IMG/VR virus record: IMGVR_UViG_3300023296_000874
Location: 1 to 64,000 of that record
Strand: one strand, 5' to 3'
Length of the DNA: 64,000 nucleotides
This document shows positions 11,230 through 60,310 of this stretch, piece by piece. The position numbers and the translations under genes were made by a program. The notes under the pieces were generated by a model. It had not been told where the DNA came from and searched no databases. It worked only from the letters and a program-made list of their open reading frames with translations. Each line of letters begins with the position of its first letter. The first letter of the stretch is position 1.

Positions 11230-11622
11230 TCAGTTGGACGTCGTTGCACTCACCGGGTCGGGTGCGGTCGCCGGGTGTACCGAACGGATCATGTCCGGGT
11301 AGAAGTCGTGCGTGGAGCCAGCCGGGTGCAGCTTCTTGGTGCCACGGTCCTCGAGCAGTTCCACCTTGACGCGCTTCTTGTTCACGGTGAGCACTCGGAC
11401 ACGGGTCTTCTGCCCGTGAGAGGTACCGATCATCAGCTCGTCGCCGGAGTTGATCTCAGCGAGGTTCACCGTGGGAGTTGCCTCCGCGCCGATGATGCCG
11501 GGGTGTCCCAAGGCGCGTAGCTTGCGGTCTGCCTTCTTGCAGATCTTCGCGAGCATGTCTTGGTCTTCGATGCCGCCGACGGCATACAGGATGCCTTCCA
11601 GAACCTTGTCCATTGTCTTCAT
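11230..11622 (-). CDS. hypothetical protein with SH3/KOW-like C-terminal region
   Basis: INSGDELMIG...RVRVLTVNKKRVKVEL beta pattern. Confidence 0.65.
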   Translation of the reverse strand: MKTMDKVLEGILYAVGGIEDQDMLAKICKKADRKLRALGHPGIIGAEATPTVNLAEINSGDELMIGTSHGQKTRVRVLTVNKKRVKVELLEDRGTKKLHPAGSTHDFYPDMIRSVHPATAPDPVSATTSN

Positions 11623-11711: not shown

Positions 11712-13259
11712 CTACGGAAGTCTGAGAATGTTGATGCCGTCGTCCGTGTGGCGCACCACCTCGTACCCGTGGCTGATGTAGTAGTCCTTCACCTTGCACA
11801 GGTCATGGGCAGCCACCGTGAGTCGCCTTGCAACAAAGGTCTCGGCTACGTGCTTGCCCACACCCATCCCACGGTAACCAGGTAGCAGGTACGCGGAGTT
11901 CCAGTCCTCATACTGAGCCACGAGCCCGGCGATTCTGCCCCATGCGATCACGGGCGTCAGCTTGCTCTCGGCAAGGATCTCTTCCTGTCCTACGTCACGG
12001 ATGTGCTGAGCCCATTCGAGCTTCACGTCTTCCCATTCCGAGCGCATGAACGCTACGTCACCATCACCGAACCCGATGAGCGTGCCGTGGTTCACAAGGT
12101 CCAGGGTCCAGCTCTGGGAGAGGCGGTACGGTCCGAGGCAGTGCAAGATCTCCTGCGCCTCTTGCACCGTTCCGCACGGGTACGGGTAGACGGTCTTGGT
12201 GTGCGGTACGACGTAGCCACCGTGGAAGTGCAGCAGCGCCTTGAGTCCCTTCATGTCGTGATAAAGGCGCGCGTGTACCGAGCAGTCGATGGAAGGCTTG
12301 ACAGTGCCATGAGCGCGCGTCAAACGATCAGAGATGTCAGCACTCGCAAAGATGAACTCGTCCGGCTTCACGTCACCCTTCTGCACACCGCGCGGGGTAG
12401 CCCAGAAGTGGGTGGGGATGGAGCTGATGAGCTGGGTCACGTTGCCGTCAGAGCTGTCAAGGAGGTTGGCCTCTTGAGCGAAGGCGAGCAGGGCTTGTGC
12501 CTCCTCCAAGGAGTCCACGAAGGTGTCCTTGGGGTCAACACCAGGGTAGAGCACGTCTTCGTCGTACAGCTCGGTCCTGCTCCACTGCACAGCTTGACGG
12601 TTGATGCAGAGGTCGACAATGGCTGCGGAAACATCCGTCTTGGAGCCTTCAAGCGGTATGGCCCCTCCCTCTGGGGTCACCGCGTAGCACGGATGCAGTC
12701 CCTTGTTCTCGGGGAGGCTGAGCTTGCTCCAATCGTTCGCGATGGTCAGGTTGATGCGACAGCTCTTCACCTGCGCCAGTGCCACGCTGATCAACTCATC
12801 GTCAGTCACGTCGCTCAGGAGCTTCCACCCTACGATGAAGGGACGGTTGGGCACCCACTCCCTCAGGTTGGCGAGGATCTTGGGCGTGCGCTTGAGGACG
12901 AGCGTCTGCTCGTCGTTCTTGGAGCGGATCTTCCCTTCCACGGGGACGGGAGCGTAGTCGCTGATGGCAGCGGGCATCAGGATGAAGTCGAAGTCACCCG
13001 TGTTTGCCAGGTCCTTCACTTGGTCGTAGAGCTCTTGGTACGTGCGGAACGTGTAGATGCCGCTCACGCCTCCGACGGTGTCCCCGTACATGCTCAAGGT
13101 GCGTTCAGCGGCGAGAAGCGTCACGTTGACACCCCTCGCCGCGAACAGATTGGCGACGGTACACCCGAACCGACCCTTGGAGCGGTTGGTGATGACGCGG
13201 ACGTCGTCGATGTCGACTTCCGTGCCTCCGGTCACGACAAGGGCTCTCAGTTCAGGCAT
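11712..13259 (-). CDS. CoaB (phosphopantothenate-cysteine ligase)-like domain fused to class II aldolase-like and GNAT-like domains
   Basis: VTGGTEVDIDDVRVITNRSKGRFG, AAISDY, LKRTPKIL, VGWKL, IAND (CoaB/DFP); GNVT...ATPRG...KPSIDCSVHARLY...LLHFH (aldolase II); YLLPGYRGMGVG (GNAT motif A). Confidence 0.8.
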   Translation of the reverse strand: MPELRALVVTGGTEVDIDDVRVITNRSKGRFGCTVANLFAARGVNVTLLAAERTLSMYGDTVGGVSGIYTFRTYQELYDQVKDLANTGDFDFILMPAAISDYAPVPVEGKIRSKNDEQTLVLKRTPKILANLREWVPNRPFIVGWKLLSDVTDDELISVALAQVKSCRINLTIANDWSKLSLPENKGLHPCYAVTPEGGAIPLEGSKTDVSAAIVDLCINRQAVQWSRTELYDEDVLYPGVDPKDTFVDSLEEAQALLAFAQEANLLDSSDGNVTQLISSIPTHFWATPRGVQKGDVKPDEFIFASADISDRLTRAHGTVKPSIDCSVHARLYHDMKGLKALLHFHGGYVVPHTKTVYPYPCGTVQEAQEILHCLGPYRLSQSWTLDLVNHGTLIGFGDGDVAFMRSEWEDVKLEWAQHIRDVGQEEILAESKLTPVIAWGRIAGLVAQYEDWNSAYLLPGYRGMGVGKHVAETFVARRLTVAAHDLCKVKDYYISHGYEVVRHTDDGINILRLP

Positions 13260-13273
13260 GTCTCTCTCCGTGG

Positions 13274-13951
13274 CTACTCGCCGTCCATGATCATGTCGAG
13301 CCGTGCGTGTCCGGGCTCAGGCCAGTAGGCATCGACGCTCTCCCAGTCCGGGTAGTTCGTGTCGAGGTACTCCTTGCACTGCCCCTTCATCCAGTCGTTC
13401 GTGGTCTTCTCGCGCTGGTACGCGGGGTCGCCGTAGGTGACGGTCAGGGGGATGTCGGGAGGGCACTCTGCACGGTTCACCGTGAGCAGCACCGTGTCAC
13501 CGTCCACCACCTTGCAGGTGAGGTCGTCGCTGTAGTCGTAGTCGATGCTGTAGCGACGGCAGAGGTTTCCACGGGCGTAGCGGTCGTAGGACGCTGCCTT
13601 GTAGAAGGTCGTGATGCGGGTGCGCCCGTCCTCGTCGACGATCTTGCCTGCTCGAGAGTCTTCTCCGCGCTCACGCTTCCACCCCGGAGGGAGCTGCGCA
13701 TCCTGGAAGATGGGGTCGCTGCCGGGGGACACCTTGATGCCCCACTTGGCGAGGGTCTTGAGTGCGTCGGCCCCACCGATGTCCACCGGGAGTTGAGTGG
13801 AGTTGAGGAACTCTCGGTTGCCTCGTGCTTCCTGAGCGAGGATGGCGTCCGAGCCCCTCCCGCCGATGAAGGTGTTGAGCATGGTCTCGCGGGCGAGCCG
13901 GGCTACTTCTTCCTTGGAGGTGGTGTCACCTACCTTGCGGTGTCCGGCCAT
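13274..13951 (-). CDS. hypothetical protein with C-terminal ARLDMIMDGE tag
   Basis: ATG 13951 in ATGA overlap with upstream stop. Confidence 0.75.
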   Translation of the reverse strand: MAGHRKVGDTTSKEEVARLARETMLNTFIGGRGSDAILAQEARGNREFLNSTQLPVDIGGADALKTLAKWGIKVSPGSDPIFQDAQLPPGWKRERGEDSRAGKIVDEDGRTRITTFYKAASYDRYARGNLCRRYSIDYDYSDDLTCKVVDGDTVLLTVNRAECPPDIPLTVTYGDPAYQREKTTNDWMKGQCKEYLDTNYPDWESVDAYWPEPGHARLDMIMDGE

Positions 13952-14190
13952 CAGATCAGCCCCGCGTTGTTGAGCAACTCGTAGACGAGCCACAAGAAGC
14001 CGATGAAGCCTACGAGGCCTCCAAACGAGCCAACGCCAGCGATCTTGCCGTGACGCTTGAAGGTGGTGTCGAAGCTGGAAAAGGCGTCACCGCCCTTGGA
14101 GAAGCTCGAGGTGACGTTGCTGAAGCCAGCGATGCCTGCCCCGATGGCGATGAAGGCTCCAACAGCCATCAAGATAAAGGGTCCGATCAT
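13951..14190 (-). CDS. small two-TM membrane protein
   Basis: Two hydrophobic helices; ACGGAGAG SD. Confidence 0.7.
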   Translation of the reverse strand: MIGPFILMAVGAFIAIGAGIAGFSNVTSSFSKGGDAFSSFDTTFKRHGKIAGVGSFGGLVGFIGFLWLVYELLNNAGLI

Positions 14191-14248: not shown

Positions 14249-14812
14249 CTATTCGAGGTCTTCCGCACAATGGTCACAAGTCCGCTCACCCTTGATGTCC
14301 TTGGAGCAGTTGCCGCACACGGGGTCACCACACCCATAGCAGGTGTAGTCAGCCGCTTCGGTACCGTCGATAACTCCACCGCCGCTCATGTAGCCAGCAG
14401 GGGCCTCGCAGCCATAGTTCACCACGTTGCACGGGTCGCCCACGGGCTCGAAGTCGCCCTGAGCCTCACGCATCTCCCGGAAGGAGTCGTACACGGGAGC
14501 GTCCATGTCGAGTTCGGAGGGTTTGTAGAGGCCGAGGCGCTCTGCGATCCGCATCATCTGGTTGGGCGCGTTGCTCTTCTCGAGAAGGATCATGGCACCG
14601 GCACAGTGCTGCGCGTTGGGGCCGTCCACCATGTTCGAGGAGCCGTCTTCGTCATCCTCGCCAGCGACGGTGGTCTTGTGGCAGGTGAATGAGCGCTGCT
14701 GCCCAATGAGCTCGGCCTCCATCTCCTGAACGCGTCCTACACGGAGGTAGGGCGTGACGTCAGTGCGGAAAGGGCAGTTACTGCACGGCTTCTTCAGGGA
14801 ATATTCGCTCAC
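14249..14812 (-). CDS. Cys-rich metal-binding hypothetical protein
   Basis: KKPCSNCPFR, FTCHKT, HCAGA plus C-terminal CxxC pairs; GTG 14812 after ACGGAGG. Confidence 0.75.
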   Translation of the reverse strand: MSEYSLKKPCSNCPFRTDVTPYLRVGRVQEMEAELIGQQRSFTCHKTTVAGEDDEDGSSNMVDGPNAQHCAGAMILLEKSNAPNQMMRIAERLGLYKPSELDMDAPVYDSFREMREAQGDFEPVGDPCNVVNYGCEAPAGYMSGGGVIDGTEAADYTCYGCGDPVCGNCSKDIKGERTCDHCAEDLE

Positions 14813-14834
14813 GTAGCCTCCGTCATATCGTATC

Positions 14835-14862
14835 AACGGAGGCTACGGGCAAATAGTCAGAG
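14835..14862 (-). promoter_or_regulatory. putative phage promoter CTCTGAC-N17-CGTT inside 11-bp inverted repeat covering the SD
   Basis: GTAGCCTCCGT (14813-14823) / ACGGAGGCTAC (14836-14846) perfect inverted repeat. Confidence 0.75.
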
Positions 14863-20802: not shown

Positions 20803-21618
20803 TCACGAACTTGCACCAGAGAACACCTGCTGAGGGTTCTCGATGATGCGGCGTTGCCAGGGAGGGATGTGCGTAGCGGTTACCCAGTGAAGGGAGATCA
20901 TGATGAGGATTGCGCCGACGTCGTGTGGGCAAAAGTAGTGGATCCAATGTGGGTCCGGTACAGCATACCCGGCGAATATCGCACTCAGGCGGATCAGAGT
21001 AACGGCTATGAAAGAAAGTACCACGACAAACAGGAAGAAGGTGCGCTGTCCCACTGCGCCCCACACTACCTTCTGGTCTTTCTGACTGATCGCTCCGTTG
21101 TAGTTGGCCTCACCCTCATCCTCGAAGGCGCGGCGGTAGAGGTACCTCAGCTCGTCCTTGAGAATAATGGGCCAGATGATCATGGTGAAGATGGTCAGGC
21201 CCCGGACGTATGGCTCTGCACTGATTGACAGGGGTCCGAACACCCACAACAGCAGTCCAGTCACCAGCGTCCCGAAGGCAATCACCCACTTCGACAGTGT
21301 GGTCACCTTCTGGAGAAACGTCGCCACCTTGTCGAGCTGAACGTTGATCTTCACGTCCAGAGAAAGGACCGGCACCAACACCTTGAAGATGAAGAAGTAG
21401 AACGCCTTCTCGCGGAGAGTGTGCGGTACGAGCTGCTCTGTGCCGTTCTCAAGCAACAGGTACGGCTTCTCGCACGCCGGACACTCGAGTTTGATCGCGC
21501 GCACCTTGCCATCGGGTGCGCTGCCTTTGAAGGCTTCTGGACAGTCGAACTTGATCTGAACTTTGCACCGGGGGCACTCGGCCCCTACGTGTCCATCCTC
21601 GTGGAAGCGGAGCATCAC
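20803..21618 (-). CDS. Zn-ribbon plus multi-TM membrane protein
   Basis: CPRC...CPAC at N-terminus then 4-5 hydrophobic helices. Confidence 0.7.
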   Translation of the reverse strand: MMLRFHEDGHVGAECPRCKVQIKFDCPEAFKGSAPDGKVRAIKLECPACEKPYLLLENGTEQLVPHTLREKAFYFFIFKVLVPVLSLDVKINVQLDKVATFLQKVTTLSKWVIAFGTLVTGLLLWVFGPLSISAEPYVRGLTIFTMIIWPIILKDELRYLYRRAFEDEGEANYNGAISQKDQKVVWGAVGQRTFFLFVVVLSFIAVTLIRLSAIFAGYAVPDPHWIHYFCPHDVGAILIMISLHWVTATHIPPWQRRIIENPQQVFSGASS

Positions 21619-22298
21619 TCACCTTCGTAGATGTAGCCCTTGTCCTGCTTGCCTTCGATCAGCCGAATGCCGCAGTTCTTGGGGTTGGGTTCGGCGTTGA
21701 GCCATTCAGGGGAGAGGTGCAGCCACATCATCACGAAACAGCGAAGCGTCGTGCCGTGACACACCACGATGATGTTGTCGATTCCGTGCCTGTCGCAGTC
21801 ACGGTGGAACGTGCCGAAGCTCTGATGCACACGAACTGCCACGTCGAAGCGGCTTTCACCACCCCAGGGGCGAGCGTAGAGCCTGCCTTCAGATGCGAGG
21901 CAGCGGTCGTAGTCGTCTGCGATGTGGGGGAAGTGGTCGCGGGTGCTCTCGGAGGCAATGCCGTTGAGGGCTCCGAACTGCTGCTCAACCAAGAGCAGGT
22001 TCTCACGTCGGTCGATGACGTGCTTGGGGTCAAGGCCGCGAACGATGGTGTCCGCCGTCTGACGGGCACGGGCGTAGGGGCTGTTCCACACGCGGTAGCG
22101 GTTGAGGTTGGGCCGCTCATCAAAGCCCTGGCTCTGAGGGTTCTCAGCAAGCCAGGTGTTCAGAGCAACACGGGCGCGCATAGCCTGAGCCACCCCTTCC
22201 TCACTGAGGTCGATGGCGTTGTCGGCAACTCGTCGATACAGCGTCGGGTCGACGTTGCCCTCTGATTCACCGTGACGGATCAGCAAAATACGCTTCAT
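21615..22298 (-). CDS. histidine phosphatase (phosphoglycerate mutase family)
   Basis: LIRHGESEGN, SPYARARQTA, GGESRFDV, VVCHG. Confidence 0.9.
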   Translation of the reverse strand: MKRILLIRHGESEGNVDPTLYRRVADNAIDLSEEGVAQAMRARVALNTWLAENPQSQGFDERPNLNRYRVWNSPYARARQTADTIVRGLDPKHVIDRRENLLLVEQQFGALNGIASESTRDHFPHIADDYDRCLASEGRLYARPWGGESRFDVAVRVHQSFGTFHRDCDRHGIDNIIVVCHGTTLRCFVMMWLHLSPEWLNAEPNPKNCGIRLIEGKQDKGYIYEGE

Positions 22299-22320
22299 GC
22301 AAGTTTCCTCTTGTCGGAGC

Positions 22321-22348
22321 AACGAGTGGTCGCCGTGTGTACTCAGAC
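22321..22348 (-). promoter_or_regulatory. putative phage promoter GTCTGAG-N17-CGTT
   Basis: Motif upstream of ATG 22298 in divergent gap. Confidence 0.65.
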
Positions 22349-22368
22349 ACCGAACCCAAGGAGGAAGC

Positions 22369-22593
22369 GTGAAAAGCTCGAAACGTCTCGCAGTCGTACT
22401 TACCGATCTGGTGCCCCAACGGGTGTTCCTCTACAAGCTGGACGCCATCACCCTCGAGGTGAAGCAACAGCTCCGGGCAGACGTGCGCCTCCGCTTGGCT
22501 GAGACAGGACTCATCAGCTCCTTTGTGATCCCTACCAACATCTCCAAGATTTGCGACGACATCATGTACGTGAAGACCGAGGACATCCTATGA
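22369..22593 (+). CDS. hypothetical protein
   Basis: GTG after AAGGAGG SD; ATGA coupling to 22590. Confidence 0.65.
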   Translation: MKSSKRLAVVLTDLVPQRVFLYKLDAITLEVKQQLRADVRLRLAETGLISSFVIPTNISKICDDIMYVKTEDIL

Positions 22594-22913
22594 GAATCCC
22601 CCTGTTCGCCTTCCACACTCAGCCCGACTTCCCTCAACAGCAGCGCGATCTCGGCTACCCAGTGTTCGCGGCGGTTGTCCCCACGGACGTCGGCCTGGTT
22701 GTCGGACGTGGCTACCGCATCTACAAGGTGGGTGCGGGCAAGTTCCAGGGCACCTGGCAAGCCGTCAACTTTGTTGAGGGTGCCTGGCTCGAGGAGGGTG
22801 ACGAGCTCAGCCTCGGGAAGGCCGTCTGGAACGATGACCGGGACGTGTGGACGTGTGAAGACGAGCCACCCGACGTAGACCAACACCGCGCAGCAATGGA
22901 CGCCTCCGAATGA
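22590..22913 (+). CDS. hypothetical protein
   Basis: ATGA overlaps at both ends. Confidence 0.7.
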   Translation: MRIPLFAFHTQPDFPQQQRDLGYPVFAAVVPTDVGLVVGRGYRIYKVGAGKFQGTWQAVNFVEGAWLEEGDELSLGKAVWNDDRDVWTCEDEPPDVDQHRAAMDASE

Positions 22914-23548
22914 AGCTCAAGCACATCCAGATTCGTATCGAGCAGTGCCTTGCACTCTCCAAAGCCTCCAACTGCCCACGCCGCAAGTTCGGAGCCCTCC
23001 TACTCGACCCTGAGCGCAATGTCATCCTGATGGACGGCTACAACGGTGCTGCTCGTGGCGGCGGCAAGCTGTGTGGGGGAGATTGGTGCCACCGAGACGG
23101 ACTCAAGCCCGAGGACCTGACAGTACACGGCAACGGCGGGGACGATGACATTGAAGACTGCTACATCAAGCAGTTCGGTGAGCACATCTGCCTTCCTGAC
23201 GGCCGTCCGATCTACTGGCGTAAGGACGCCAACGAGCACCGTGCCCATCTGCTCGAGAAGTACGCCCCCATCCAGTCGGGCACTCACATGGAAGTGGGCT
23301 GCCACCATGCAGAGATGAACGTCATCTGCAACTCGGCTGCGAGCGGTACGGCTTCCAACGGTGCCTGGCTCATCGTCACCGGGGAGCCCTGCCTGATGTG
23401 CAGCAAGCTCATCCACCACGCCGGGATCGCCAAGGTGATCGTCGTCGCGAATGGCTACATGGGAGCCAACGGGGTAGAGTACCTCAAGCAGCACGGTGTC
23501 GAAGTGCAGGCCGTTGAAGGACCGACCGACCCACGCTTGGAAACATGA
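22910..23548 (+). CDS. dCMP deaminase family protein with internal insertion
   Basis: SNCPRRKFGA, GYNG, HHAEMNVI, EPCLMC zinc-deaminase motifs. Confidence 0.85.
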   Translation: MKLKHIQIRIEQCLALSKASNCPRRKFGALLLDPERNVILMDGYNGAARGGGKLCGGDWCHRDGLKPEDLTVHGNGGDDDIEDCYIKQFGEHICLPDGRPIYWRKDANEHRAHLLEKYAPIQSGTHMEVGCHHAEMNVICNSAASGTASNGAWLIVTGEPCLMCSKLIHHAGIAKVIVVANGYMGANGVEYLKQHGVEVQAVEGPTDPRLET

Positions 23549-28960: not shown

Positions 28961-30172
28961 CTATGCGGCTGGAGCGACTGCCCATCCGATTTGCGGGGTC
29001 AGGTAGCGTCCCACAAACTCACTTCCCAGTACACCGGAGATCAGCTTCATGTTGCGTTCTGGAATTCCGGAAGGTCCGTCGGCATCGATGATGAACTCAA
29101 CCTGGCTCACGTTGGCCGGGTAGCTGTTGGCGACGTAGCGGAGATCTACTCCCTCTTGGACGTCGGGTACCGCGCGGTCGTACTGCTCGGCGTAGGCTTG
29201 AACCGCAGCCTCGTCGAAGGTCTGACGCATCTCGGAGGGGTACTGGGCCACGCCGGGGATCTGCCAGGGCTCGTCGGGGTTGTCGTAGCTGTAGTTGGGG
29301 TTCCGAACCATGGCGGTGCCGGGGCGCGGGGAGTGAGCGAAGAAGGCGTTGATCCATCCGGAGATGTACGGGCCACCCGATCCTCCGTGCTCCTTGAAGA
29401 AGGAGCGCCAGAAGGTCAGATCCTCTTCGCCGTTGGCCGCAGCCTTGAGCTTGGCAGTCACACCACCGAGGGTCTCTACCCACCGCGCGAGGCCGGGGAA
29501 CTTGGTCCCGATGGTCTTGACGCCGTCGTGGATCTTGTCCCAATCCTCGGGAGTTCCGCCAAGGTTGAAGGCCGGGATGCCGCACATGGTCCCGCCACGG
29601 TACTCGAAGTAGTCGCTGGCGACGTCCATGAAGGTGATGAGCAGAGCGGTCCGGCTCTCGTCGGTGTCGGTGCTGAAGGAGGGGAGCAGGTCATCGCTGA
29701 ACCCGCCCGGCACCTTCTCACGGAGGAGGTCACGGAACACGGGGATGGTCGCGGCCCAATCGGGCGTCAGGGTGCCGAAACTGTCGTCGAGCACCTTCAG
29801 AACCTGCTTCTCGCCGGGCTTGGTGGTGAAGAGGTGTGCGCAGGCCTCCGTGTTGAGGTGAACGTGGATTGCCACCTCGTGAAGGATCATGTACCACACA
29901 ACCTCGGGGTCGATGCCGAAGGGGATGTGTTGGTCGAAGGCGTGATGCGCGGCCTGCACGAACACGGAGGTCTTGGGGGCACCACGGTAGTGCTCACGGG
30001 CCTCGATGAAGGTCTGGTTCGGGCGGCTCACAAACACGGGCGTCAGGCCGGTGATGCCGTTGATGAAGTCTGCCGTCGACTCGGTCGCGGGCTTCCAGCT
30101 CTTCTCGTCTTCCCACAGAAGGGTCAGACGGGAGTCGGACTCAACGGATGGATCGGTGATCACTACGGACAT
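28961..30172 (-). CDS. DUF4419-like protein
   Basis: AFDQHIPFGIDPEVVWYMI, PSFSTDT, MD...YFEY, CGIP...LGGTPEDW, ISGWINAFF match my recollection of this family. Confidence 0.75.
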   Translation of the reverse strand: MSVVITDPSVESDSRLTLLWEDEKSWKPATESTADFINGITGLTPVFVSRPNQTFIEAREHYRGAPKTSVFVQAAHHAFDQHIPFGIDPEVVWYMILHEVAIHVHLNTEACAHLFTTKPGEKQVLKVLDDSFGTLTPDWAATIPVFRDLLREKVPGGFSDDLLPSFSTDTDESRTALLITFMDVASDYFEYRGGTMCGIPAFNLGGTPEDWDKIHDGVKTIGTKFPGLARWVETLGGVTAKLKAAANGEEDLTFWRSFFKEHGGSGGPYISGWINAFFAHSPRPGTAMVRNPNYSYDNPDEPWQIPGVAQYPSEMRQTFDEAAVQAYAEQYDRAVPDVQEGVDLRYVANSYPANVSQVEFIIDADGPSGIPERNMKLISGVLGSEFVGRYLTPQIGWAVAPAA

Positions 30173-30745: not shown

Positions 30746-31140
30746 CAGGACACAAGTTCCCGTACTCGCTGGTTGTACTGAGCGAAGGGGCCACGGGCCA
30801 ACACGTCCCAGCCAACCCAATCCACCTTCCCCTCGGAGGGGTCGGTGGGAATCCAGGTGGCACGCTTCAGGTCCAGGTACTCCACCCGGAAGGTGACGCA
30901 GTCGTAGTCCTGATCTCCCTCACACACCGCGCGGTACACCTCGGTCAGCTCGGTGTCGATGGGGAGTTGGTAGCCGGTCTCCTCAGCGGCTTCACGGAGT
31001 GCTGCCTGCTCGGGGGTCTCTCCGGGGTCCACCTTCCCACCAGGCAGTCCGAAGGCGGTGTGGTCGTTGCGTCGGCTACAGGCCAGCACCTCACCCTCGG
31101 GGTTGACAACGATGATGCAAACGGCAATCGGTAGGCTCAT
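30745..31140 (-). CDS. NUDIX hydrolase
   Basis: [25 protein letters not shown] Nudix box. Confidence 0.9.
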
Positions 31141-41197: not shown

Positions 41198-41775
41198 TAT
41201 ACCGTCATCATCGCGAGGATTGCCATGCCGTCACGCACGATGTCCCCGTGGTCGAAGCCGAAGATGATCTTGCCGGAGCGGATGTCCTCCTCATGGATCC
41301 AGGCGGTCCAGAAGGCGTCGTCGTCTCCCCGAGCCTTGCGGGCCTCAGCGGGCGTCACACGGCAGCAGTAGGCGAGGCTGACAACGTGGCGGCGGGGGTC
41401 ACGGTCGGTGGCTCCGTACACGTCGATGAGCGTCATGAAGTCCCGCTCGAGGCCGGTCTCTTCCTTGAGCTCGCGCGGGGCACAGTCCTTGGGGTCCTCG
41501 CCGTAGTCCACGAACCCGCCCGGAGTGCAGACGAAGCCGTCGGTGTGGCAGTAGGGAGGGTTCGCACGCCCGATGAGCAGGAAGTGTCGTCCCGCGCGGG
41601 TGGGAGCGGGGCCACGACGGTCCACCATCGTGTCGCCCAGCAGAGCGCGTCCCTCTTCCTGCCAGCCCTCCCAGTTGGGCAGGTCGTCCTCGGGGATGTC
41701 GGTAGCGACGAGGATGTCGGTGCAGAGGCTGGAGGTGCGGTAGGTCGGAGCTTCGAGCTGTTCAACGGTTGGCAT
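41197..41775 (-). CDS. NUDIX hydrolase (ADP-ribose pyrophosphatase/NrtR-like)
   Basis: PGGFVDYGED...RELKEETGL, VYGATDRDPRRHVVSLAY. Confidence 0.85.
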   Translation of the reverse strand: MPTVEQLEAPTYRTSSLCTDILVATDIPEDDLPNWEGWQEEGRALLGDTMVDRRGPAPTRAGRHFLLIGRANPPYCHTDGFVCTPGGFVDYGEDPKDCAPRELKEETGLERDFMTLIDVYGATDRDPRRHVVSLAYCCRVTPAEARKARGDDDAFWTAWIHEEDIRSGKIIFGFDHGDIVRDGMAILAMMTV

Positions 41776-49170: not shown

Positions 49171-49359
49171 TCAGTCTCCTTGAACAATCAACAGCAGAGC
49201 AGCAAGCGAAGAGAAGGGGATGTGGCCCTCCTCACAGTCCTTGACTGAGTTCCGTATGAGGAGGGCAACGCCACCCCCATGAACCACAGCCCGCTTCTCA
49301 AGGAGCGACAAGATGGCCTCGTTGGATACCACCACAAGTTCGGTGCCGGTCTCAATCAC
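49171..49359 (-). CDS. small hypothetical protein
   Basis: GTG 49359 overlapping Pnk stop. Confidence 0.45.
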   Translation of the reverse strand: MIETGTELVVVSNEAILSLLEKRAVVHGGGVALLIRNSVKDCEEGHIPFSSLAALLLIVQGD

Positions 49360-50323
49360 CGAAGAAGTCCTTCGCCCACTCGAACTGGAAGCCCGCCCGT
49401 GCCGCAAAGGTCTGGTCGCTCTTCATGTCGCCCACGTAGATGCAGGCGTCCGGGTTGAGCTTGTACTTCTCGATGAACACGACGCCCATGCCTGCCATCG
49501 GCTTGCGCCAGTAGGAGCTCGGGGGTCCACCACGGTCAGGGGCGAACAGGTACTCGATGTCATGTCCGAGCTGCCGGTTGGTCTCATCGAAGCAGTCGCG
49601 GCAGGTGACGTCGCTGACGTACTTGGGGCTGTCCGAGGCTTGGCTCACACCGCTCTGGTTGCTGATGCCCAGGATCCGGTAGCCCTTGTCGATGTACTCC
49701 TGGATGATGGCGGTACGTCCCTCCAGAGCGCGCACGTCCCCGATCTCCTTGGGGTAGTGGTCACCACTGTTGGTCAGGCGCAACGTGCCGTCGTAGTCGA
49801 GCAGCAGAGCCTTCCCCGTGTACTCGGAGCCGAAGTCGGTCACCACGTCCACTTCTTCGATGCTGTCGAAGCCCTCGGCCATGGTCGGGTCTTCGAACTG
49901 CTTCCAGTACGCAAACTGAGCCATGGGCGGGAACATGTTCGGGTTCTTGCGGTGCTTCTTGTACTCGGCCTTGCCGAAGAGCACACCGAACTTCTGGATC
50001 TGACGCCGGGCCGCAAAGAGCTGAGCCTGCTCACGGGTGGTCTGTAGCCACAGCACGCGGACAGGTAGGTTGAGCTGCCTTGCGTTCACCATCAGGCCCC
50101 GGCGTGCGGCGACGTTCCGGTAGGTGTTGTCAAGCACGAAGCGGCGCTTCCCGCGCTTGTACTGCTCCTGCATCACCTTGTAGATCTTGCTGTCGGGACT
50201 GTTCAGCTTCCCGCCGATCTCGTCACGGTTGATGCGGGTGTAGCCCTGCTTCACGAGGGATTGGACGTGCGTGGTCTTCCCGCCGCCCGGAGGTCCCATG
50301 ACAATGACGATTTCGTGTTCCAT
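49352..50323 (-). CDS. polynucleotide kinase/3'-phosphatase-like protein (P-loop kinase plus HAD domain)
   Basis: GPPGGGKTT, INRDE, VLDNT; LLDYDGTL, ISNQSG, RKP, YVGD...D...A. Confidence 0.85.
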   Translation of the reverse strand: MEHEIVIVMGPPGGGKTTHVQSLVKQGYTRINRDEIGGKLNSPDSKIYKVMQEQYKRGKRRFVLDNTYRNVAARRGLMVNARQLNLPVRVLWLQTTREQAQLFAARRQIQKFGVLFGKAEYKKHRKNPNMFPPMAQFAYWKQFEDPTMAEGFDSIEEVDVVTDFGSEYTGKALLLDYDGTLRLTNSGDHYPKEIGDVRALEGRTAIIQEYIDKGYRILGISNQSGVSQASDSPKYVSDVTCRDCFDETNRQLGHDIEYLFAPDRGGPPSSYWRKPMAGMGVVFIEKYKLNPDACIYVGDMKSDQTFAARAGFQFEWAKDFFGD

Positions 50324-51986: not shown

Positions 51987-53174
51987 TTAGAGGACGCTCT
52001 CTACGATACGAACGTAGAGGTCATCCAGCTTGTCCATGTCGGGGCTGTAAGGTAGCACGGGAGTGAGCTCGGGAAGGGGCTCGAGGCCCTTCTTCACCCG
52101 CGCAGTCACACGCTGCTTCTCGGTACCGTAGTACGATGTGTAGATGTCACCGAGAGCGGCGTTCTCGCGATCAGCCCAGTCCACCAACTCGTCGTAGGTC
52201 CAGGCACCCTTGCGGATAGCGAGGAGCTCTTCACGGTCGATCCCGCCGCGCCACACATGCACCTTGCCCGTCGTCAAGATCTCCCGTCCCATGCGGAGCA
52301 GGCGAACGAGGTGGGCACCGTGCTTGGTGTCGTAGCCGGAGGCAGCTTCCAGCGCAGCCCGCTTGGGGTTCCGCTGACGCTTCCAGGTCTCGAAGCTCTT
52401 CCAGTTCTTTTGGGCGTCCTTGTACCGCTTCTCACCCTTGAGGGCCTCGAGCAGTCCTTCGTCGATCCCGATGGAGCGTGCGGCAGCAATCCACAGTTCA
52501 TCGTCGGTGGTCACGCCGATGGTGGCGAGGGTCTCAGCGATGTTGTCCTTGGCGCGGATCTTCTCGCTGTCGGCCATTTCGCCGAAGTCCCACTTCCACT
52601 CGTCAAGCTGCTTGTCGATGGCGGCGAGGAGCACGTTGCGCTGATGCTGCGTCACCACTTCCTCACCGAGGCCAAACTCCTCGCGGGTCGGCTTGTGGGT
52701 CGGAGGGTTGAGCAACCAGGCCCGGTGTCCCTTGATGCGCTTGAGCTGCTGGAAGGCGTAGCCGGTGAAGCGGTGCTTGGCGGCTCCACTCAGGAAGAGG
52801 TCCCGGTGTTCGCGGAGCAACTGCCCGGCCCAGTTGTGCATGAGCAGCTCTTCGTCGCGGCAGAAGAGCACGTCGAGCATTCCGGGGTTGCAGTCGGCGG
52901 TCAGCTTCATGAACTTGCCGAGGCCGTACACGACGCCCTCGAGCTTCTCGCGTTCGGCGGCGTCCATCTGCTCGGCGTCGAGGTACTTGCGGAAGGGTTC
53001 CATCTGCCCAGGCTTGTCGCACTGGTCGAAACGCTTGCGGAAGGTCAAGTGGTACGGACGTGGAGGTAGGCAGACGCCCTTGAGGTCTACGTCCGAAGTG
53101 TCGGTGTGGAGCCCGTAAGCTCGGGAACCAGCCACTCCAACGAGGATCGCAGAGTCATGTAGGTCGAAATCCAT
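51987..53174 (-). CDS. predicted nucleotidyltransferase (Pol-beta superfamily, PF10127-like)
   Basis: GSRAYGLHTDTSDVDLKGV, NPGMLDVLF, GYDTKHGAHLVRLL. Confidence 0.85.
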   Translation of the reverse strand: MDFDLHDSAILVGVAGSRAYGLHTDTSDVDLKGVCLPPRPYHLTFRKRFDQCDKPGQMEPFRKYLDAEQMDAAEREKLEGVVYGLGKFMKLTADCNPGMLDVLFCRDEELLMHNWAGQLLREHRDLFLSGAAKHRFTGYAFQQLKRIKGHRAWLLNPPTHKPTREEFGLGEEVVTQHQRNVLLAAIDKQLDEWKWDFGEMADSEKIRAKDNIAETLATIGVTTDDELWIAAARSIGIDEGLLEALKGEKRYKDAQKNWKSFETWKRQRNPKRAALEAASGYDTKHGAHLVRLLRMGREILTTGKVHVWRGGIDREELLAIRKGAWTYDELVDWADRENAALGDIYTSYYGTEKQRVTARVKKGLEPLPELTPVLPYSPDMDKLDDLYVRIVESVL

Positions 53175-58816: not shown

Positions 58817-60310
58817 TCACCTCATTGTCGGGAACAGAATCACGTCCCGAATTGATTGTGTGTCTGTCAACAGCATCACGAGCCGGTCGATGCCAATCCC
58901 CTCACCGGAGGTGGGAGGCATACCGAAGCTCAACGCGTCGATGTAGTCCTGGTCGAAGTACATGGCTTCATCGTCCCCGCGTGCCTTGGCAGCAGCCTGG
59001 GCCTGGAAACGAGCAGCCTGCTCAACGGGGTCGTTCAGCTCTTGGAAGCCGTTGGCGATTTCCATACCGGCGATGTAGAGCTCGAAGCGGTCTGCTACCT
59101 CTGGGTCATCAGCAGATGCTCGAGAGAGTGGGCTGATGTCCAAGGGGAATCCGGTCACGAAGGTCGGCTGGATCAGCTTGTCCTCAACGTACTCGTCGAA
59201 GTAGAGCTGGAACCACCGCCCGATGGTCCGGGGGAGCTTGGTAGCGTCCGGGTGGTCCTGTACCCACCTCGAGCGCATCTCGGGCATGGAGAAGGGGTCG
59301 TTGATGCCCGCGTGCTCCATGATCAGGTCGGCCATGCTCACGCGCCTGAAGGTGGTCAGGTCAAGCTCGTGCCCGTCGTAGGTGCAGACGTCCATCGGAA
59401 GGAACTCGCCAACCCGGCAGGCTTCCTCGTAGATGACGCGGTTGTTGGCACCACGGATGATGGCTTCGGTGGTGTCCATCAGGTCAGCCGGTGTGGCGTG
59501 GGCCTGATAGAACTCCAGCATGGTGAACTCGGGGTTGTGCGTCCCGTCCACTCCCTCGTTCCGGAAGTTGCGGTTCAGCTCGAACACTCGCTCGTAGCCA
59601 CCCACGATGAGCCTCTTGAGGTAGAGCTCAGGGGCGATGCGTAGGTAGAGGTCCTTGTCGAGAGCGTTGTGGTGCGTCACGAATGGTCGTGCGTTCGCAC
59701 CGCCTGGGAGCGTCTGCATCATCGGCGTCTCCACCTCCATGAACCGATGGTCTTCAAAGTACCTCCGGATGTAGGATACGATGGTGCTGCGCGCACGGAA
59801 CCGGTCGCGAGTGTCTTGGCTCACGATGAGGTCGAGGTACCGCTGACGGCGCTGCTGCTCCACGTCGGTGAACCCCGCGTGCTTGTCCGGCAGGCTCTTG
59901 ATGCACTTGGAGTAGAGCGCAAGGCTGTCCACCTTGAGGCTCAGGTCACCGCGTCGGGTACGGATGAGCTGCGCTTCTGCGTACACCCAGTCGCCGATGT
60001 CCAACTTCTTCCACACGTCGGCGTACATGACGGGGCCGATGCCCGCACGGCGCACGAACAACTGCATCCGGCTTTCGCCATCCTCGATGAAGGCGAAGCC
60101 AATCTTGCCCATCTCGTTCTTCTGGACGATGCGTCCGGCCACACGGTAGACGGTGGTCTGCGCCTCCAACTCCTCCGCGCTCAGATCAGCACCGATGCGC
60201 AAGATCTCGAGCAGCCGGTGGCTGAGGTCCTTGGAGACGGGATAGGGATCTACGCCTTCAGCGCGTAGTGCGTCCAACTTTTCCAGCCGTGCTGGTTCAA
60301 ATTCGCTCAC
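58817..60310 (-). CDS. lysS: class II lysine--tRNA ligase
   Basis: N-terminal OB anticodon-binding domain; YLRIAPELYLKRL, FRNEG...HNPEFTMLEFY, GMPPTSGEGIGIDRLVMLLT. Confidence 0.95.
   Translation of the reverse strand: MSEFEPARLEKLDALRAEGVDPYPVSKDLSHRLLEILRIGADLSAEELEAQTTVYRVAGRIVQKNEMGKIGFAFIEDGESRMQLFVRRAGIGPVMYADVWKKLDIGDWVYAEAQLIRTRRGDLSLKVDSLALYSKCIKSLPDKHAGFTDVEQQRRQRYLDLIVSQDTRDRFRARSTIVSYIRRYFEDHRFMEVETPMMQTLPGGANARPFVTHHNALDKDLYLRIAPELYLKRLIVGGYERVFELNRNFRNEGVDGTHNPEFTMLEFYQAHATPADLMDTTEAIIRGANNRVIYEEACRVGEFLPMDVCTYDGHELDLTTFRRVSMADLIMEHAGINDPFSMPEMRSRWVQDHPDATKLPRTIGRWFQLYFDEYVEDKLIQPTFVTGFPLDISPLSRASADDPEVADRFELYIAGMEIANGFQELNDPVEQAARFQAQAAAKARGDDEAMYFDQDYIDALSFGMPPTSGEGIGIDRLVMLLTDTQSIRDVILFPTMR

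What the first reader, a model, noticed from the sequence alone, without database searches (positions are those of the whole stretch)
11712..13259. Three-domain CoaB - class II aldolase - GNAT fusion
Seen: one 515-aa ORF with CoaB/DFP motifs (ITNRSKGRFG, AAISDY, VGWKL, IAND), then an aldolase-II/adducin-like region (GNVT, ATPRG, KPSID, HARLY, LLHFH), then a GNAT motif A (YLLPGYRGMGVG). The CoaC decarboxylase half is absent. I know of no described protein with this architecture. Inference: a pathway fusion making a cysteinylated/acylated metabolite or modifying CoA pools, possibly for nucleotide or protein modification.
Basis: partly seen in the sequence, partly recalled or inferred. Interest (0 to 1): 0.62.

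Follow-up and report, generated by a model that had tools for sequence, protein, structure and literature searches.

The report
Phage CoaB–aldolase–GNAT fusion enzyme
A salt-lake jumbo phage encodes an intact coenzyme-A-pathway ligase (CoaB) fused to a metal-binding aldolase-fold domain and a small acetyltransferase-fold domain; it belongs to a rare, recurrent, uncharacterised enzyme family whose other members sit beside CoA-pathway genes and, in two bacterial loci, beside TANGO2.

Summary
Window 11712-13259 (minus strand) is one 515-aa ORF with three domains: CoaB/DFP (Pfam E 2e-30), class II aldolase fold (Pfam E 4e-10; VIA Z 14) and a minimal GNAT (weak by Pfam, supported by family profile and fold). 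The AlphaFold model is confident (pLDDT 90.8).

The architecture is not unique. The aldolase-GNAT module defines a family of about 108 clusters at 50% identity. It is almost always fused to, or adjacent to, CoaB, and cellular members usually add a C-terminal NUDIX. It occurs in large phage-like contigs and is rare in the two phyla sampled (2/124 and 2/401 genomes). I found no paper describing it.

The CoaB signature residues match canonical CoaBC. In one Planctomycetia genome the fusion is the only CoaB beside PanK, CoaD and CoaE. Neighbours in relatives include CoaC-type flavoproteins, CoaD, CoaE, PanB, a CN-hydrolase and TANGO2. Phages with a stand-alone CoaB carry CoaC next to it; two phages with the CoaB-aldolase fusion have no CoaC.

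Best reading: an auxiliary enzyme of CoA/4'-phosphopantetheine metabolism. It has a working CoaB step, a catalytic but unassigned metal domain, and a CoA/acetyl-CoA-binding GNAT. The exact chemistry of the last two domains is unknown.

The parts
11712..13259 (-). Whole gene: 515-aa CoaB / class II aldolase-fold / GNAT fusion (P0001), stop codon included
   Evidence: ORF list and translation. Full-length AlphaFold model has pLDDT 90.8 and pTM 0.87. Homologues at 32-46% identity cover 89-100% of the query.
12597..13259 (-). Residues 1-221: CoaB (phosphopantothenate-cysteine ligase, DFP) domain
   Evidence: Pfam DFP E 2.3e-30. PDB sequence hits 2gk4 and 4qji. Foldseek TMt about 0.8 to 2gk4, 6th2 and 1u7z. 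Signature residues D18, R21, N25, G29, A98, D101, K110 and N175 are identical to canonical CoaBC B-domains.
11982..12596 (-). Residues 222-426: class II aldolase/epimerase-fold metal domain. Putative ligands D325, H344, H346, H391; phosphate-site motifs GN 272-273, TPR 288-290, KPS 321-323; family-specific FPYPCG-type motif with invariant C362
   Evidence: Pfam Aldolase_II E 3.7e-10. Profile against AraD 1jdi E 9e-13. VIA Z 12-14 to FucA, AraD and decarboxylases; Foldseek probability 1.0. The listed residues are invariant in alignments A1 and A2.
11715..11981 (-). Residues 427-515: minimal GNAT domain with motif A (R463-x-x-G466-x-G468) and a motif-B-like YY-x-x-x-G-Y (493-499); C488 nearly invariant
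   Evidence: Pfam Acetyltransf_7 E 0.06, below cut-off. Family profile against YjaB E 9e-5. GNAT structures at Z 5.7-7.4. Conservation in A1 and A2.
13264..13269 (-). Shine-Dalgarno-like GGAGAG, 4 nt before the ATG
   Evidence: Read directly from the sequence.
11230..11622 (-). Downstream 130-aa ORF of unknown function, conserved next to the closest homologue's gene
   Evidence: tblastn of the L039 downstream gene: 39.6% identity over 134 aa, E 2e-23. No Pfam, PHROG or PADLOC hit.
13274..13993 (-). Upstream 239-aa orphan ORF, 14-nt gap to the fusion; membership in the same unit is unproven
   Evidence: No Pfam, PHROG or PADLOC hit. No usable Atlas hit and a low-confidence Atlas model. Not conserved in the syntenic contig L039.

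Best explanation
The gene encodes an auxiliary enzyme of coenzyme A / 4'-phosphopantetheine metabolism, carried by a jumbo phage found in salt-lake metagenomes.

Step 1 (well supported). The N-terminal domain is a catalytically intact CTP-type phosphopantothenate-cysteine ligase. It activates the carboxylate of 4'-phosphopantothenate as the acyl-cytidylate and condenses it with L-cysteine.

Step 2 (inferred). The middle domain is joined directly to the C-terminal subdomain of CoaB. It is an AraD-like class II aldolase-fold metalloenzyme with an Asp plus three His metal site, a partly retained phosphate site with extra invariant Arg/Lys, and an invariant Cys. It most likely binds and chemically processes a phosphorylated pantothenate-derived intermediate: the CoaB substrate or product. 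In phages it appears where the CoaC partner is missing, so it may take over or bypass the step after CoaB.

Step 3 (inferred). The C-terminal minimal GNAT binds CoA or acetyl-CoA. It acts either as an end-product sensor or as an acyl donor site.

The phage would use the enzyme to sustain, repair or redirect the infected cell's 4'-phosphopantetheine/CoA supply.
For: Catalytic integrity of CoaB:
- All signature residues are shared with canonical CoaBC.
- The fold matches CoaB-CTP and CoaB-acyl-CMP complex structures.

Genuine CoaB role in relatives:
- In Planctomycetia genome G003 the fusion is the only DFP-domain gene, beside PanK-III, CoaD, CoaE and flavoproteins.
- In five roughly 1-Mb Patescibacteria genomes it is the only DFP gene. 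One of them (G006) also has CoaC, directly downstream of the fusion, plus CoaD and CoaE.

CoA-pathway neighbours:
- CoaC-type flavoprotein adjacent in L031 and L034.
- PanB directly upstream in L007.
- Bona fide CoaD and CoaE on the 420-kb phage-like contig L002, and CoaE on L041.
- Amidohydrolases next to the module: TANGO2 in L034 and L043 and a CN-hydrolase in L028.
- An archaeal Atlas cluster fuses Flavoprotein, DFP and TANGO2.

Integration of the module with CoaB:
- About 108 clusters at E<=1e-30. In most, the module starts at residue about 215-225, behind a CoaB-sized N-terminus; every one of those scanned carries DFP.
- Split versions keep a degenerate CoaB C-terminal remnant.

Likely catalysis by the middle domain: metal ligands, phosphate-site motifs and C362 are invariant across 23 sequences at about 35% mean identity.

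Phage pattern:
- Stand-alone CoaB has CoaC adjacent in 5 of 7 phage records, plus a remnant in a sixth.
- The two phage records with a CoaB-aldolase fusion have no flavoprotein at all: G000 at 257 kb and LR745208.1 at 485 kb.
Against: - No biochemical data exist for any member.
- In this phage no other CoA-pathway gene was found: no CoaC, CoaD, CoaE or type III PanK; its nucleotidyltransferase is NadD-type. Immediate neighbours are orphans.
- Three bacterial genomes carry a canonical CoaBC in addition to the fusion, so the fusion is not simply the housekeeping enzyme there.
- Several Patescibacteria carriers show no CoaC, CoaD, CoaE or PanK, though the MAGs are incomplete. That could mean a substrate outside the CoA pathway.
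- NCBIfam CoaB equivalog scores are far below the curated cut-offs: 103 against 265, and 94 against 217.
- CoaC is adjacent to aldolase-bearing genes in L031 and L034, which argues against a simple CoaC replacement.
- The fused-versus-CoaC contrast in phages rests on 2 against 7 records and is not statistically significant.
Confidence: 0.45

Rival explanations
1. Flavin-independent replacement or bypass of CoaC. The aldolase-fold metal domain decarboxylates 4'-phosphopantothenoylcysteine, or otherwise yields 4'-phosphopantetheine, so that the fusion alone performs the CoaBC function.
For: - Phages with the CoaB-aldolase fusion lack any flavoprotein (G000 and LR745208.1), whereas stand-alone phage CoaBs have CoaC adjacent in 5-6 of 7 records.
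- G010 has the fusion plus CoaD and CoaE but no flavoprotein.
- The class II aldolase superfamily includes decarboxylases and oxidative decarboxylases among the structural hits: 2z7b, YgbL/6voq and NovR/9ryg.
Against: - CoaC-type genes lie directly beside aldolase-bearing genes in L031 and L034, and flavoproteins are present in G003.
- From general enzymology, decarboxylating an N-acyl-cysteine without first oxidising the thiol has no known non-redox route.
- The sample of phage genomes is tiny, and the MAGs and virus records are incomplete.
Confidence: 0.15
2. A CoaB paralogue working outside CoA synthesis. The aldolase domain makes or binds a different phosphorylated carboxylate, CoaB attaches cysteine to it, and the GNAT acetylates the product. 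The result would be a distinct small thiol or modified metabolite; this is the first reader's 'cysteinylated/acylated metabolite'.
For: - The distribution is patchy and accessory-like: 2/124 and 2/401 genomes.
- The fusion coexists with a canonical CoaBC in three genomes.
- It is present in Patescibacteria with no other detectable CoA genes.
- The GNAT has motif A and a motif-B tyrosine, compatible with real acyl transfer.
- NCBIfam equivalog cut-offs are not met.
Against: - Every CoaB residue checked is unchanged from canonical enzymes.
- In G003 the fusion is the only CoaB in an otherwise complete pathway.
- Neighbours, where informative, are CoA-pathway genes.
Confidence: 0.2
3. The two C-terminal domains are regulatory or scaffolding only. 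The GNAT senses CoA/acetyl-CoA, the aldolase fold provides oligomerisation, and together they give feedback control of a phage-borne CoaB.
For: - The GNAT is minimal, with an intact CoA pyrophosphate-binding motif.
- Class II aldolases are obligate oligomers, and CoaB of mycobacteria is allosterically regulated by CoA thioesters (general knowledge).
- The module is structurally joined to the CoaB C-terminal subdomain.
Against: Invariance of four metal ligands, the GN/TPR/KPS phosphate-site motifs and C362 across about 35%-identical sequences is hard to explain without catalysis or at least specific ligand binding.
Confidence: 0.12
4. A counter-defence or RNA/NAD-centred enzyme. The fusion acts on nucleotide-linked molecules (ADP-ribose derivatives, CoA- or NAD-capped RNA) rather than supplying CoA.
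For: - Phage-type copies lie among Thg1, Metallophos, NADAR, NUDIX, AlkB, Tad4, 2H and Rnl1 genes.
- Most family members carry a MutT-like NUDIX domain.
- This phage record has six NUDIX genes and, elsewhere in the window, RNA-repair genes.
Against: - No PADLOC hit to the core domains.
- No conserved defence or anti-defence partner. Those neighbours vary between contigs and are absent from this window's locus.
- Cellular members sit in housekeeping contexts.
Confidence: 0.08

Closest known systems
Monofunctional CoaB / PPCS (streptococcal type, PDB 2gk4; CoaB domain of CoaBC, PDB 1u7z, 6th2)
   Same: Same fold (TMt about 0.8) and the same nucleotide-binding and catalytic signature residues: GGT, D-x-x-R-x-x-x-N-x-S-x-G, AA-x-x-D-Y/F, the GK lysine and the AND asparagine.
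   Different: It carries about 290 extra C-terminal residues (aldolase fold plus GNAT). It has no fused or nearby CoaC. It scores well below the NCBIfam equivalog cut-offs. In my tree it lies outside the sampled canonical CoaBC B-domain clade, though the backbone is unresolved.
L-ribulose-5-phosphate 4-epimerase AraD and L-fuculose-1-phosphate aldolase FucA (class II aldolase superfamily)
   Same: Same fold (Z 13-14). Matching GN motif, KPS-x-D motif with Asp as in AraD, H-x-H, and a third His in an HG context.
   Different: After the H-x-H the sequence diverges into a family-specific T-x-[FY]-P-[YFW]-P-C-G motif. It has extra invariant Arg/Lys (R290, K294, K321). The known acid/base residues of AraD and FucA could not be mapped. 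It is never free-standing: it always occurs with CoaB or a CoaB remnant.
Small GNAT acetyltransferases (Pfam Acetyltransf_7; E. coli YjaB, PDB 2kcw)
   Same: GNAT core strands and helices, motif A R-x-x-G-x-G, and a motif-B-like tyrosine.
   Different: About 90 residues. It borrows the last aldolase helix and lacks a typical N-terminal arm. It is below the Pfam cut-off in this protein. The acceptor is unknown.
Phage coaB-coaC gene pairs in large phages (IMG/VR records behind L053-L056; GenBank LR756501.1)
   Same: Phage-borne CoaB with the same catalytic residues. This shows that large phages repeatedly acquire the middle of the CoA pathway.
   Different: Those CoaBs are stand-alone (229-261 aa) and have a CoaC-type flavoprotein next to them. 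Here the partner is the fused aldolase-GNAT module and no flavoprotein exists in the record.
Four-domain cellular form CoaB-aldolase-GNAT-NUDIX (e.g. P0018, annotated by NCBI only as 'NUDIX domain-containing protein')
   Same: Same family, with 35-41% identity over the first three domains.
   Different: The window's protein and its closest relatives (P0002-P0006) end after the GNAT and lack the MutT-like NUDIX domain.

Membership tests
CoaB / phosphopantothenate-cysteine ligase (Pfam DFP, PF04127) | Sequence match above the curated Pfam threshold | tested here: met
   106.3 bits against 22, residues 4-179.
CoaB / phosphopantothenate-cysteine ligase | CoaB three-dimensional fold | tested here: met
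   Foldseek top 50 hits are all CoaB/PPCS, E down to 6e-16, TMt 0.75-0.82.
CoaB / phosphopantothenate-cysteine ligase | Catalytic and nucleotide-binding signature residues (equivalents of E. coli R206, N210, A276, D279, K289 and the AND asparagine; the mapping to E. coli numbering is from my own knowledge) | tested here: met
   D18, R21, N25, G29, A98, D101, K110 and N175 are identical in the fusion family and in canonical CoaBC B-domains.
CoaB / phosphopantothenate-cysteine ligase | NCBIfam equivalog-level score (PRK06732, TIGR02114, TIGR00521) | tested here: not met
   103.2 against 265; 94.3 against 217.2; 90.6 against 219.7. The protein is a diverged member, not an equivalog by NCBI's rule.
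CoaB / phosphopantothenate-cysteine ligase | Enzymatic ligation of cysteine to 4'-phosphopantothenate | not testable with these tools
   Needs an enzyme assay or complementation.
Bifunctional CoaBC (Dfp) | N-terminal FMN-binding flavoprotein (CoaC) domain | tested here: not met
   No PF02441 match in the protein or in the whole 257-kb record.
Class II aldolase / adducin N-terminal superfamily (PF00596) | Sequence match above the Pfam threshold, and the fold | tested here: met
   40.4 bits against 22.2. Profile against AraD E 9e-13. VIA Z 14.1 to FucA and 13.3 to AraD.
Class II aldolase / adducin N-terminal superfamily | Divalent-metal site: one acidic residue plus three histidines | tested here: met
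   D325 aligns with the AraD KPSSD aspartate. H344, H346 and H391 are invariant in A1 and A2. Metal content itself was not measured.
Class II aldolase / adducin N-terminal superfamily | Known catalytic acid/base residues of a specific subfamily (FucA, AraD, MtnB) | tested here: inconclusive
   The profile match stops after the H-x-H. The region holding those residues is replaced by the family-specific PCG motif.
GNAT acyltransferases | Sequence match above the Pfam threshold | tested here: not met
   For this protein, Acetyltransf_7 scores 14.2 bits against 27, E 0.06. Homologue P0045 just reaches it, 27.1 against 27.
GNAT acyltransferases | GNAT fold with the acetyl-CoA motif A (R/Q-x-x-G-x-G/A) | tested here: met
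   R463-G-M-G466-V-G468 is conserved. Family profile against YjaB E 9e-5. More than 30 GNAT structures at Z 5.7-7.4, which is middling.
CoaB-aldolase-GNAT(-NUDIX) family (uncharacterised, defined here) | Aldolase-GNAT module with the invariant GN, PR, K-x-S-I-D, H-x-H, PCG and HG motifs, behind a CoaB domain | tested here: met
   329 bits, E 1.9e-93 against the family profile. All invariant columns are present. It groups with the phage-type clade at 100/99 support.

The most novel reading that the evidence does not exclude
The aldolase-GNAT module is a new catalytic step of CoA / 4'-phosphopantetheine metabolism that works with CoaB. It would be either a flavin-independent route past the CoaC step, or part of a loop that replaces the thiol end of the cofactor. 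In that loop an amidohydrolase (TANGO2 or a CN-hydrolase) strips a damaged cysteamine end, CoaB re-adds cysteine, and the new module processes the intermediate. Phages, and apparently bacteria with small or predatory-lineage genomes, would carry it to keep the cofactor pool usable. The same prokaryotic linkage would give a testable substrate hypothesis for TANGO2, a human disease gene whose substrate is unknown.
Probability: 0.25. Interest if true: 0.85.

Novelty: new variant of a known kind. Interest (0 to 1): 0.6.

Why it matters
Three reasons:

1. It shows that large phages repeatedly carry the middle of the CoA pathway, either as coaB-coaC pairs or as this fusion. I found no paper treating this as an auxiliary function of phages.

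2. It defines an uncharacterised enzyme family with about 100 clusters, conserved metal ligands and a conserved cysteine, always tied to CoaB. Such obligatory fusions usually mark a missing pathway step, here in one of the best-studied cofactor pathways.

3. Split versions of the family sit in apparent operons with TANGO2, and an archaeal cluster fuses CoaC, CoaB and TANGO2. TANGO2 deficiency in people responds to pantothenate and the protein binds CoA and acyl-CoA (PMC11179719, PMC11867700, PMC13044924), but its substrate is unknown. The prokaryotic linkage makes 'an amidase acting on pantetheine-type amides' directly testable.

Tried and rejected
- Megablast of the region against deposited phages found nothing.
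- tblastn against phages found only CoaB-domain matches. Two of the 'Bacteriophage sp.' fragments examined (L051, L052) have the CoaB domain in the C-terminal half of a roughly 400-aa frame, as in canonical CoaBC.
- A single-protein scan of IMG/VR found no relative. The alignment-based scan found only stand-alone CoaBs.
- PHROGs gave one weak hit of unknown function. PADLOC gave nothing for the core domains or neighbours.
- Neighbour annotation in the window was uninformative: orphans, DUF6283/phrog_5443.
- Word search with the aldolase-GNAT half alone returned only five proteins. The exhaustive profile search was needed.
- I considered the fusion to be simply the housekeeping CoaB. I rejected this as a general rule because three genomes also have a canonical CoaBC.
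- I considered TANGO2 a universal partner and rejected it: it is absent from the phage record and from 8 of 10 carrier genomes.
- I considered this phage's nucleotidyltransferase to be CoaD and rejected it: it is NadD-type.
- Whole-record searches of the ENA contigs behind L002 and L003 were not possible.
- The CoaB-domain tree did not resolve where the fused clade arose.
- Literature searches for the architecture, for phage DFP genes and for TANGO2 with phosphopantothenate-pathway fusions found no description.
- Read laying and complex prediction were not used. No RNA run holds the stretch, and no binding claim is made.
Full report
WHAT IS THERE

The stated coordinates hold one ATG-initiated ORF of 515 aa on the minus strand. 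A GGAGAG ribosome-binding site lies 4 nt upstream.

The window is the first 64 kb of a 257,533-bp IMG/VR virus record: CheckV 81% complete, GC about 0.60, no tRNA in the window. The same DNA occurs in salt-lake metagenomes from many studies. The record is therefore a jumbo phage, or possibly an archaeal virus, of hypersaline lakes.

DOMAINS

- CoaB. Pfam gives DFP/CoaB at residues 4-179 (E 2.3e-30). PDB sequence search hits streptococcal-type CoaB 2gk4 and mycobacterial CoaB. Foldseek's first 50 hits on the full-length model are all CoaB/PPCS.
- Aldolase fold. Pfam gives Aldolase_II at residues 259-355 (E 3.7e-10). A profile of the C-terminal 290 residues across 23 family members hits L-ribulose-5-phosphate 4-epimerase AraD at E 9e-13.
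- GNAT. Pfam gives only a sub-threshold match (E 0.06). The family profile hits the small GNAT YjaB at E 9e-5.
- Models. The full-length AlphaFold model built on the family alignment is confident: pLDDT 90.8, pTM 0.87. The C-terminal half folded alone gives pLDDT 95.5. It matches class II aldolase-fold enzymes at VIA Z 12-14: FucA, AraD, decarboxylases and the non-haem-iron members TqaM, NovR and pyruvic oxime dioxygenase. It then matches a long run of GNATs at Z 5.7-7.4.

The three-domain observation is confirmed; the GNAT is the weakest call.

A FAMILY, NOT A SINGLETON

The word-index search found 40 homologues sharing the architecture. Alignment A1 shows a common core of CoaB, aldolase fold and minimal GNAT. 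Most cellular members add a C-terminal MutT-like NUDIX domain. The window's protein and its nearest relatives stop after the GNAT.

Invariant residues across about 35%-identical sequences:
- The CoaB signature.
- In the middle domain: G272-N273, P289-R290, K294, K321-x-S323-I-D325, H344-x-H346, T356, P361-C362-G363 and H391-G392.
- In the GNAT: G445, R463, G466 and G468, plus C488.

D325 aligns with the metal-binding Asp of AraD's KPSSD motif, and the H-x-H with AraD's H95/H97.

An exhaustive profile search of 1.84 billion cluster representatives found 108 clusters at E<=1e-30 and 723 at E<=1e-10. In most of them the module starts at residue about 215-225, behind a CoaB-sized N-terminus. A second subfamily of 550-590 aa is also DFP plus Aldolase_II.

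The few proteins of about 430 aa that seem to lack CoaB carry a degenerate remnant of the CoaB C-terminal subdomain at their N-terminus (hhalign probability 95%). In both cases examined they have a separate CoaB gene in the same locus. The module is therefore structurally and evolutionarily tied to CoaB.

WHERE IT OCCURS

The GTDB pattern scan found fused copies in MAGs labelled Oligoflexia, Nannocystaceae, Polyangiaceae, Planctomycetia, Gammaproteobacteria and many Patescibacteria, and a split copy on a 3.26-Mb Bdellovibrionota contig.

The family is rare where sampled: 2 of 124 genomes in one phylum and 2 of 401 sampled in another. The ESM Atlas lists viral (Uroviricota) clusters of DFP and DFP+Aldolase_II proteins with 50-125 members. 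In a tree of CoaB domains the phage-type fusions (P0001-P0005, P0011) form one well-supported clade (100/99). The deeper branching is unresolved.

FUNCTIONAL EVIDENCE FROM CONTEXT

(a) The CoaB residues D18, R21, N25, G29, A98, D101, K110 and N175 are identical to those of canonical CoaBC B-domains. From my own knowledge of E. coli CoaB, these correspond to the residues needed for both acyl-cytidylate formation and cysteine condensation.

(b) In Planctomycetia genome G003 the fusion is the only DFP-domain gene, while type III PanK, CoaD, CoaE and flavoproteins are present. There it must be the working CoaB.

(c) In five roughly 1-Mb Patescibacteria genomes it is the only DFP gene.
- G006 also has a CoaC-type gene directly downstream, plus CoaD and CoaE.
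- G010 has CoaD and CoaE but no flavoprotein.
- The others show none of these.
- None shows PanK type I or III. The MAGs are incomplete, so absence is provisional.

(d) Three genomes (G001, G002, G004) have a canonical CoaBC as well. The fusion therefore also exists as an extra paralogue.

(e) Neighbours:
- PanB directly upstream in L007.
- CoaC-type flavoprotein adjacent in L031 and L034.
- A CN-hydrolase upstream in L028.
- A conserved divergent TrmB-like regulator in six Patescibacteria-type loci (L021, L023-L025, L031, L035) and in L043.
- Genuine CoaD and CoaE (above NCBIfam cut-offs) on the 420-kb phage-like contig L002, and CoaE on L041.

(f) Two independent loci have the split genes in an apparent operon with TANGO2.
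- L034: CoaC-like, CoaB-like, aldolase-GNAT, TANGO2.
- L043: TrmB | aldolase-GNAT | TANGO2 | CoaB.
- The Atlas also holds an archaeal cluster of 653-aa proteins with Flavoprotein, DFP and TANGO2 in one chain.
- TANGO2 is described as a Cys-Ntn amidohydrolase-fold protein of unknown substrate that binds CoA and acyl-CoA, and its deficiency responds to vitamin B5 (PMC13044924, PMC11867700, PMC11179719).

(g) Phage pattern:
- Stand-alone phage CoaBs (229-261 aa) have a CoaC-type flavoprotein gene immediately adjacent in four IMG/VR records, two of them complete genomes of 356 and 207 kb, and in GenBank LR756501.1. A remnant is present in LR756500.1.
- The five IMG/VR records and G000 were searched for CoaD, CoaE and type III PanK; none scored above the cut-offs.
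- The two phage records with a CoaB-aldolase fusion, this one and LR745208.1, have no flavoprotein at all.

THE WINDOW'S OWN LOCUS

Immediate neighbours are uninformative:
- An orphan 239-aa ORF lies upstream.
- A 130-aa ORF lies downstream. It is conserved beside the closest homologue's gene on the syntenic contig L039.
- Next upstream of the orphan ORF lies a DUF6283/phrog_5443 gene at 14249-14836.

Elsewhere the window has a dCMP deaminase, a histidine phosphatase, a PNK, an RlaP nucleotidyltransferase, a class II aminoacyl-tRNA synthetase and a NAPRTase-like gene. The whole record has six NUDIX genes and a NadD-type adenylyltransferase. No CoaC, CoaD, CoaE, type III PanK or TANGO2 was found in the record.

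INTERPRETATION

Shown:
- The three folds.
- Intact CoaB signature residues.
- An intact metal-site signature.
- An intact GNAT motif A.
- An obligatory association of the module with CoaB.
- Repeated association with CoA-pathway genes.
- Recurrent capture of CoaB by large phages.

Inferred:
- The N-domain makes 4'-phosphopantothenoylcysteine.
- The metal domain acts on a phosphorylated pantothenate-type intermediate. As a matter of chemistry rather than tool evidence, the phosphate-C-C-CH(OH)-C(=O) spacing of the 4'-phosphopantoyl unit is the same as phosphate-C5-C4-C3(OH)-C2(=O) in AraD's substrate. The extra invariant Arg/Lys would suit a substrate that also carries a carboxylate.
- The GNAT binds CoA or acetyl-CoA.

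Which reaction the metal domain catalyses is open. The phage contrast (fusion without CoaC, stand-alone CoaB with CoaC) hints at a replacement or bypass of the CoaC step. CoaC genes beside aldolase-bearing genes in L031 and L034 argue against a simple replacement.

The amidohydrolase partners suggest an alternative. TANGO2 has an amidohydrolase fold, and the CN-hydrolase superfamily includes pantetheinase (general knowledge). The module could belong to a loop that removes and rebuilds the cysteamine end of the cofactor.

Both are hypotheses. I give 0.45 to the general CoA-pathway reading and list the specific variants as rivals.

COMPARISON AND NOVELTY

The protein is a member of the DFP/CoaB superfamily by sequence, fold and residues, but not an NCBIfam equivalog. 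It is not a CoaBC.

The fused family has no functional annotation in the sources. Names given are 'hypothetical', 'NUDIX domain-containing', or 'phosphopantothenoylcysteine decarboxylase', although no flavoprotein domain is on record for that protein. I found no description of the architecture in the searchable literature, including a comparative survey of jumbo phages.

I rate it a new variant of a known kind: a CoA-pathway ligase with two undescribed obligatory partner domains.

Noticed in passing
L034:5032-8999 (3.26-Mb contig of a Bdellovibrionota-labelled MAG) and L043:5052-8221: Apparent operons joining a CoaC-like flavoprotein, CoaB-like gene, aldolase-GNAT gene and TANGO2. In addition, an ESM Atlas archaeal cluster (54 members, 653 aa) has Flavoprotein, DFP and TANGO2 in one protein. 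This is a prokaryotic genomic link between TANGO2 and the CoaB/CoaC steps that I did not find in the TANGO2 papers read.
   Followed up: partly
L053-L056 (IMG/VR records of 111-356 kb) and GenBank LR756501.1 (L048): Large phages carry a stand-alone coaB with a CoaC-type flavoprotein gene immediately adjacent. No CoaD, CoaE or type III PanK above cut-off was found in the IMG/VR records searched. The middle of the CoA pathway is a recurrent phage cargo.
   Followed up: partly
L021, L023, L024, L025, L031, L035, L043 (upstream of the family gene, opposite strand): A conserved TrmB-like regulator of about 260 aa is divergently transcribed from the fusion gene in these mostly Patescibacteria-labelled loci, suggesting dedicated regulation.
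   Followed up: partly
window 30769-31131 and 41281-41595; record G000 at 67040-67264, 168650-168973, 186306-186668, 216274-216597: The virus record encodes six separate NUDIX-domain genes, an unusually high number. One lies in a 697-aa open frame.
   Followed up: no
window 60437-62008 (-) and G000:238697-239212 (+): A diverged NAPRTase-like gene and a NadD-type nicotinate/nicotinamide mononucleotide adenylyltransferase. The phage appears to carry NAD salvage genes.
   Followed up: partly
window 49352-50323 (-), 51987-53174 (-), 58817-60310 (-): A polynucleotide kinase/3'-phosphatase, an RlaP-family (RNA-repair pathway) nucleotidyltransferase and a class II Asp/Lys/Asn-type aminoacyl-tRNA synthetase form an RNA-repair and translation cluster. 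No tRNA gene is present in the 64-kb window.
   Followed up: no
window 21615-23548; L039: Contig L039, which carries the closest homologue P0002, is syntenic with the window. A histidine phosphatase (21615-22322, -) and a dCMP deaminase (22910-23548, +) are about 55% identical, and several small ORFs are shared. It therefore looks like a fragment of a related phage.
   Followed up: partly
window 12003-13328 (+): A 441-aa open frame lies antisense to the fusion gene. It is the usual shadow ORF of a 60% GC gene, not a second gene.
   Followed up: partly
window 28961-30172 (-) and 14249-14836 (-): A DUF4419 protein (E 6e-52) and a DUF6283/phrog_5443 protein: conserved families of unknown function in a phage setting.
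   Followed up: no
L003:6013-13850 (phage-like contig carrying P0011): The NUDIX-bearing phage-type fusion sits in a co-directional run of Thg1, Metallophos, two unknown genes, a 287-aa GNAT-like gene, the fusion, NADAR, NUDIX and AlkB-like genes. Thg1 is also directly downstream of P0005 in L040. This is a possible RNA/ADP-ribose repair island whose relation to the fusion is unexplained.
   Followed up: no
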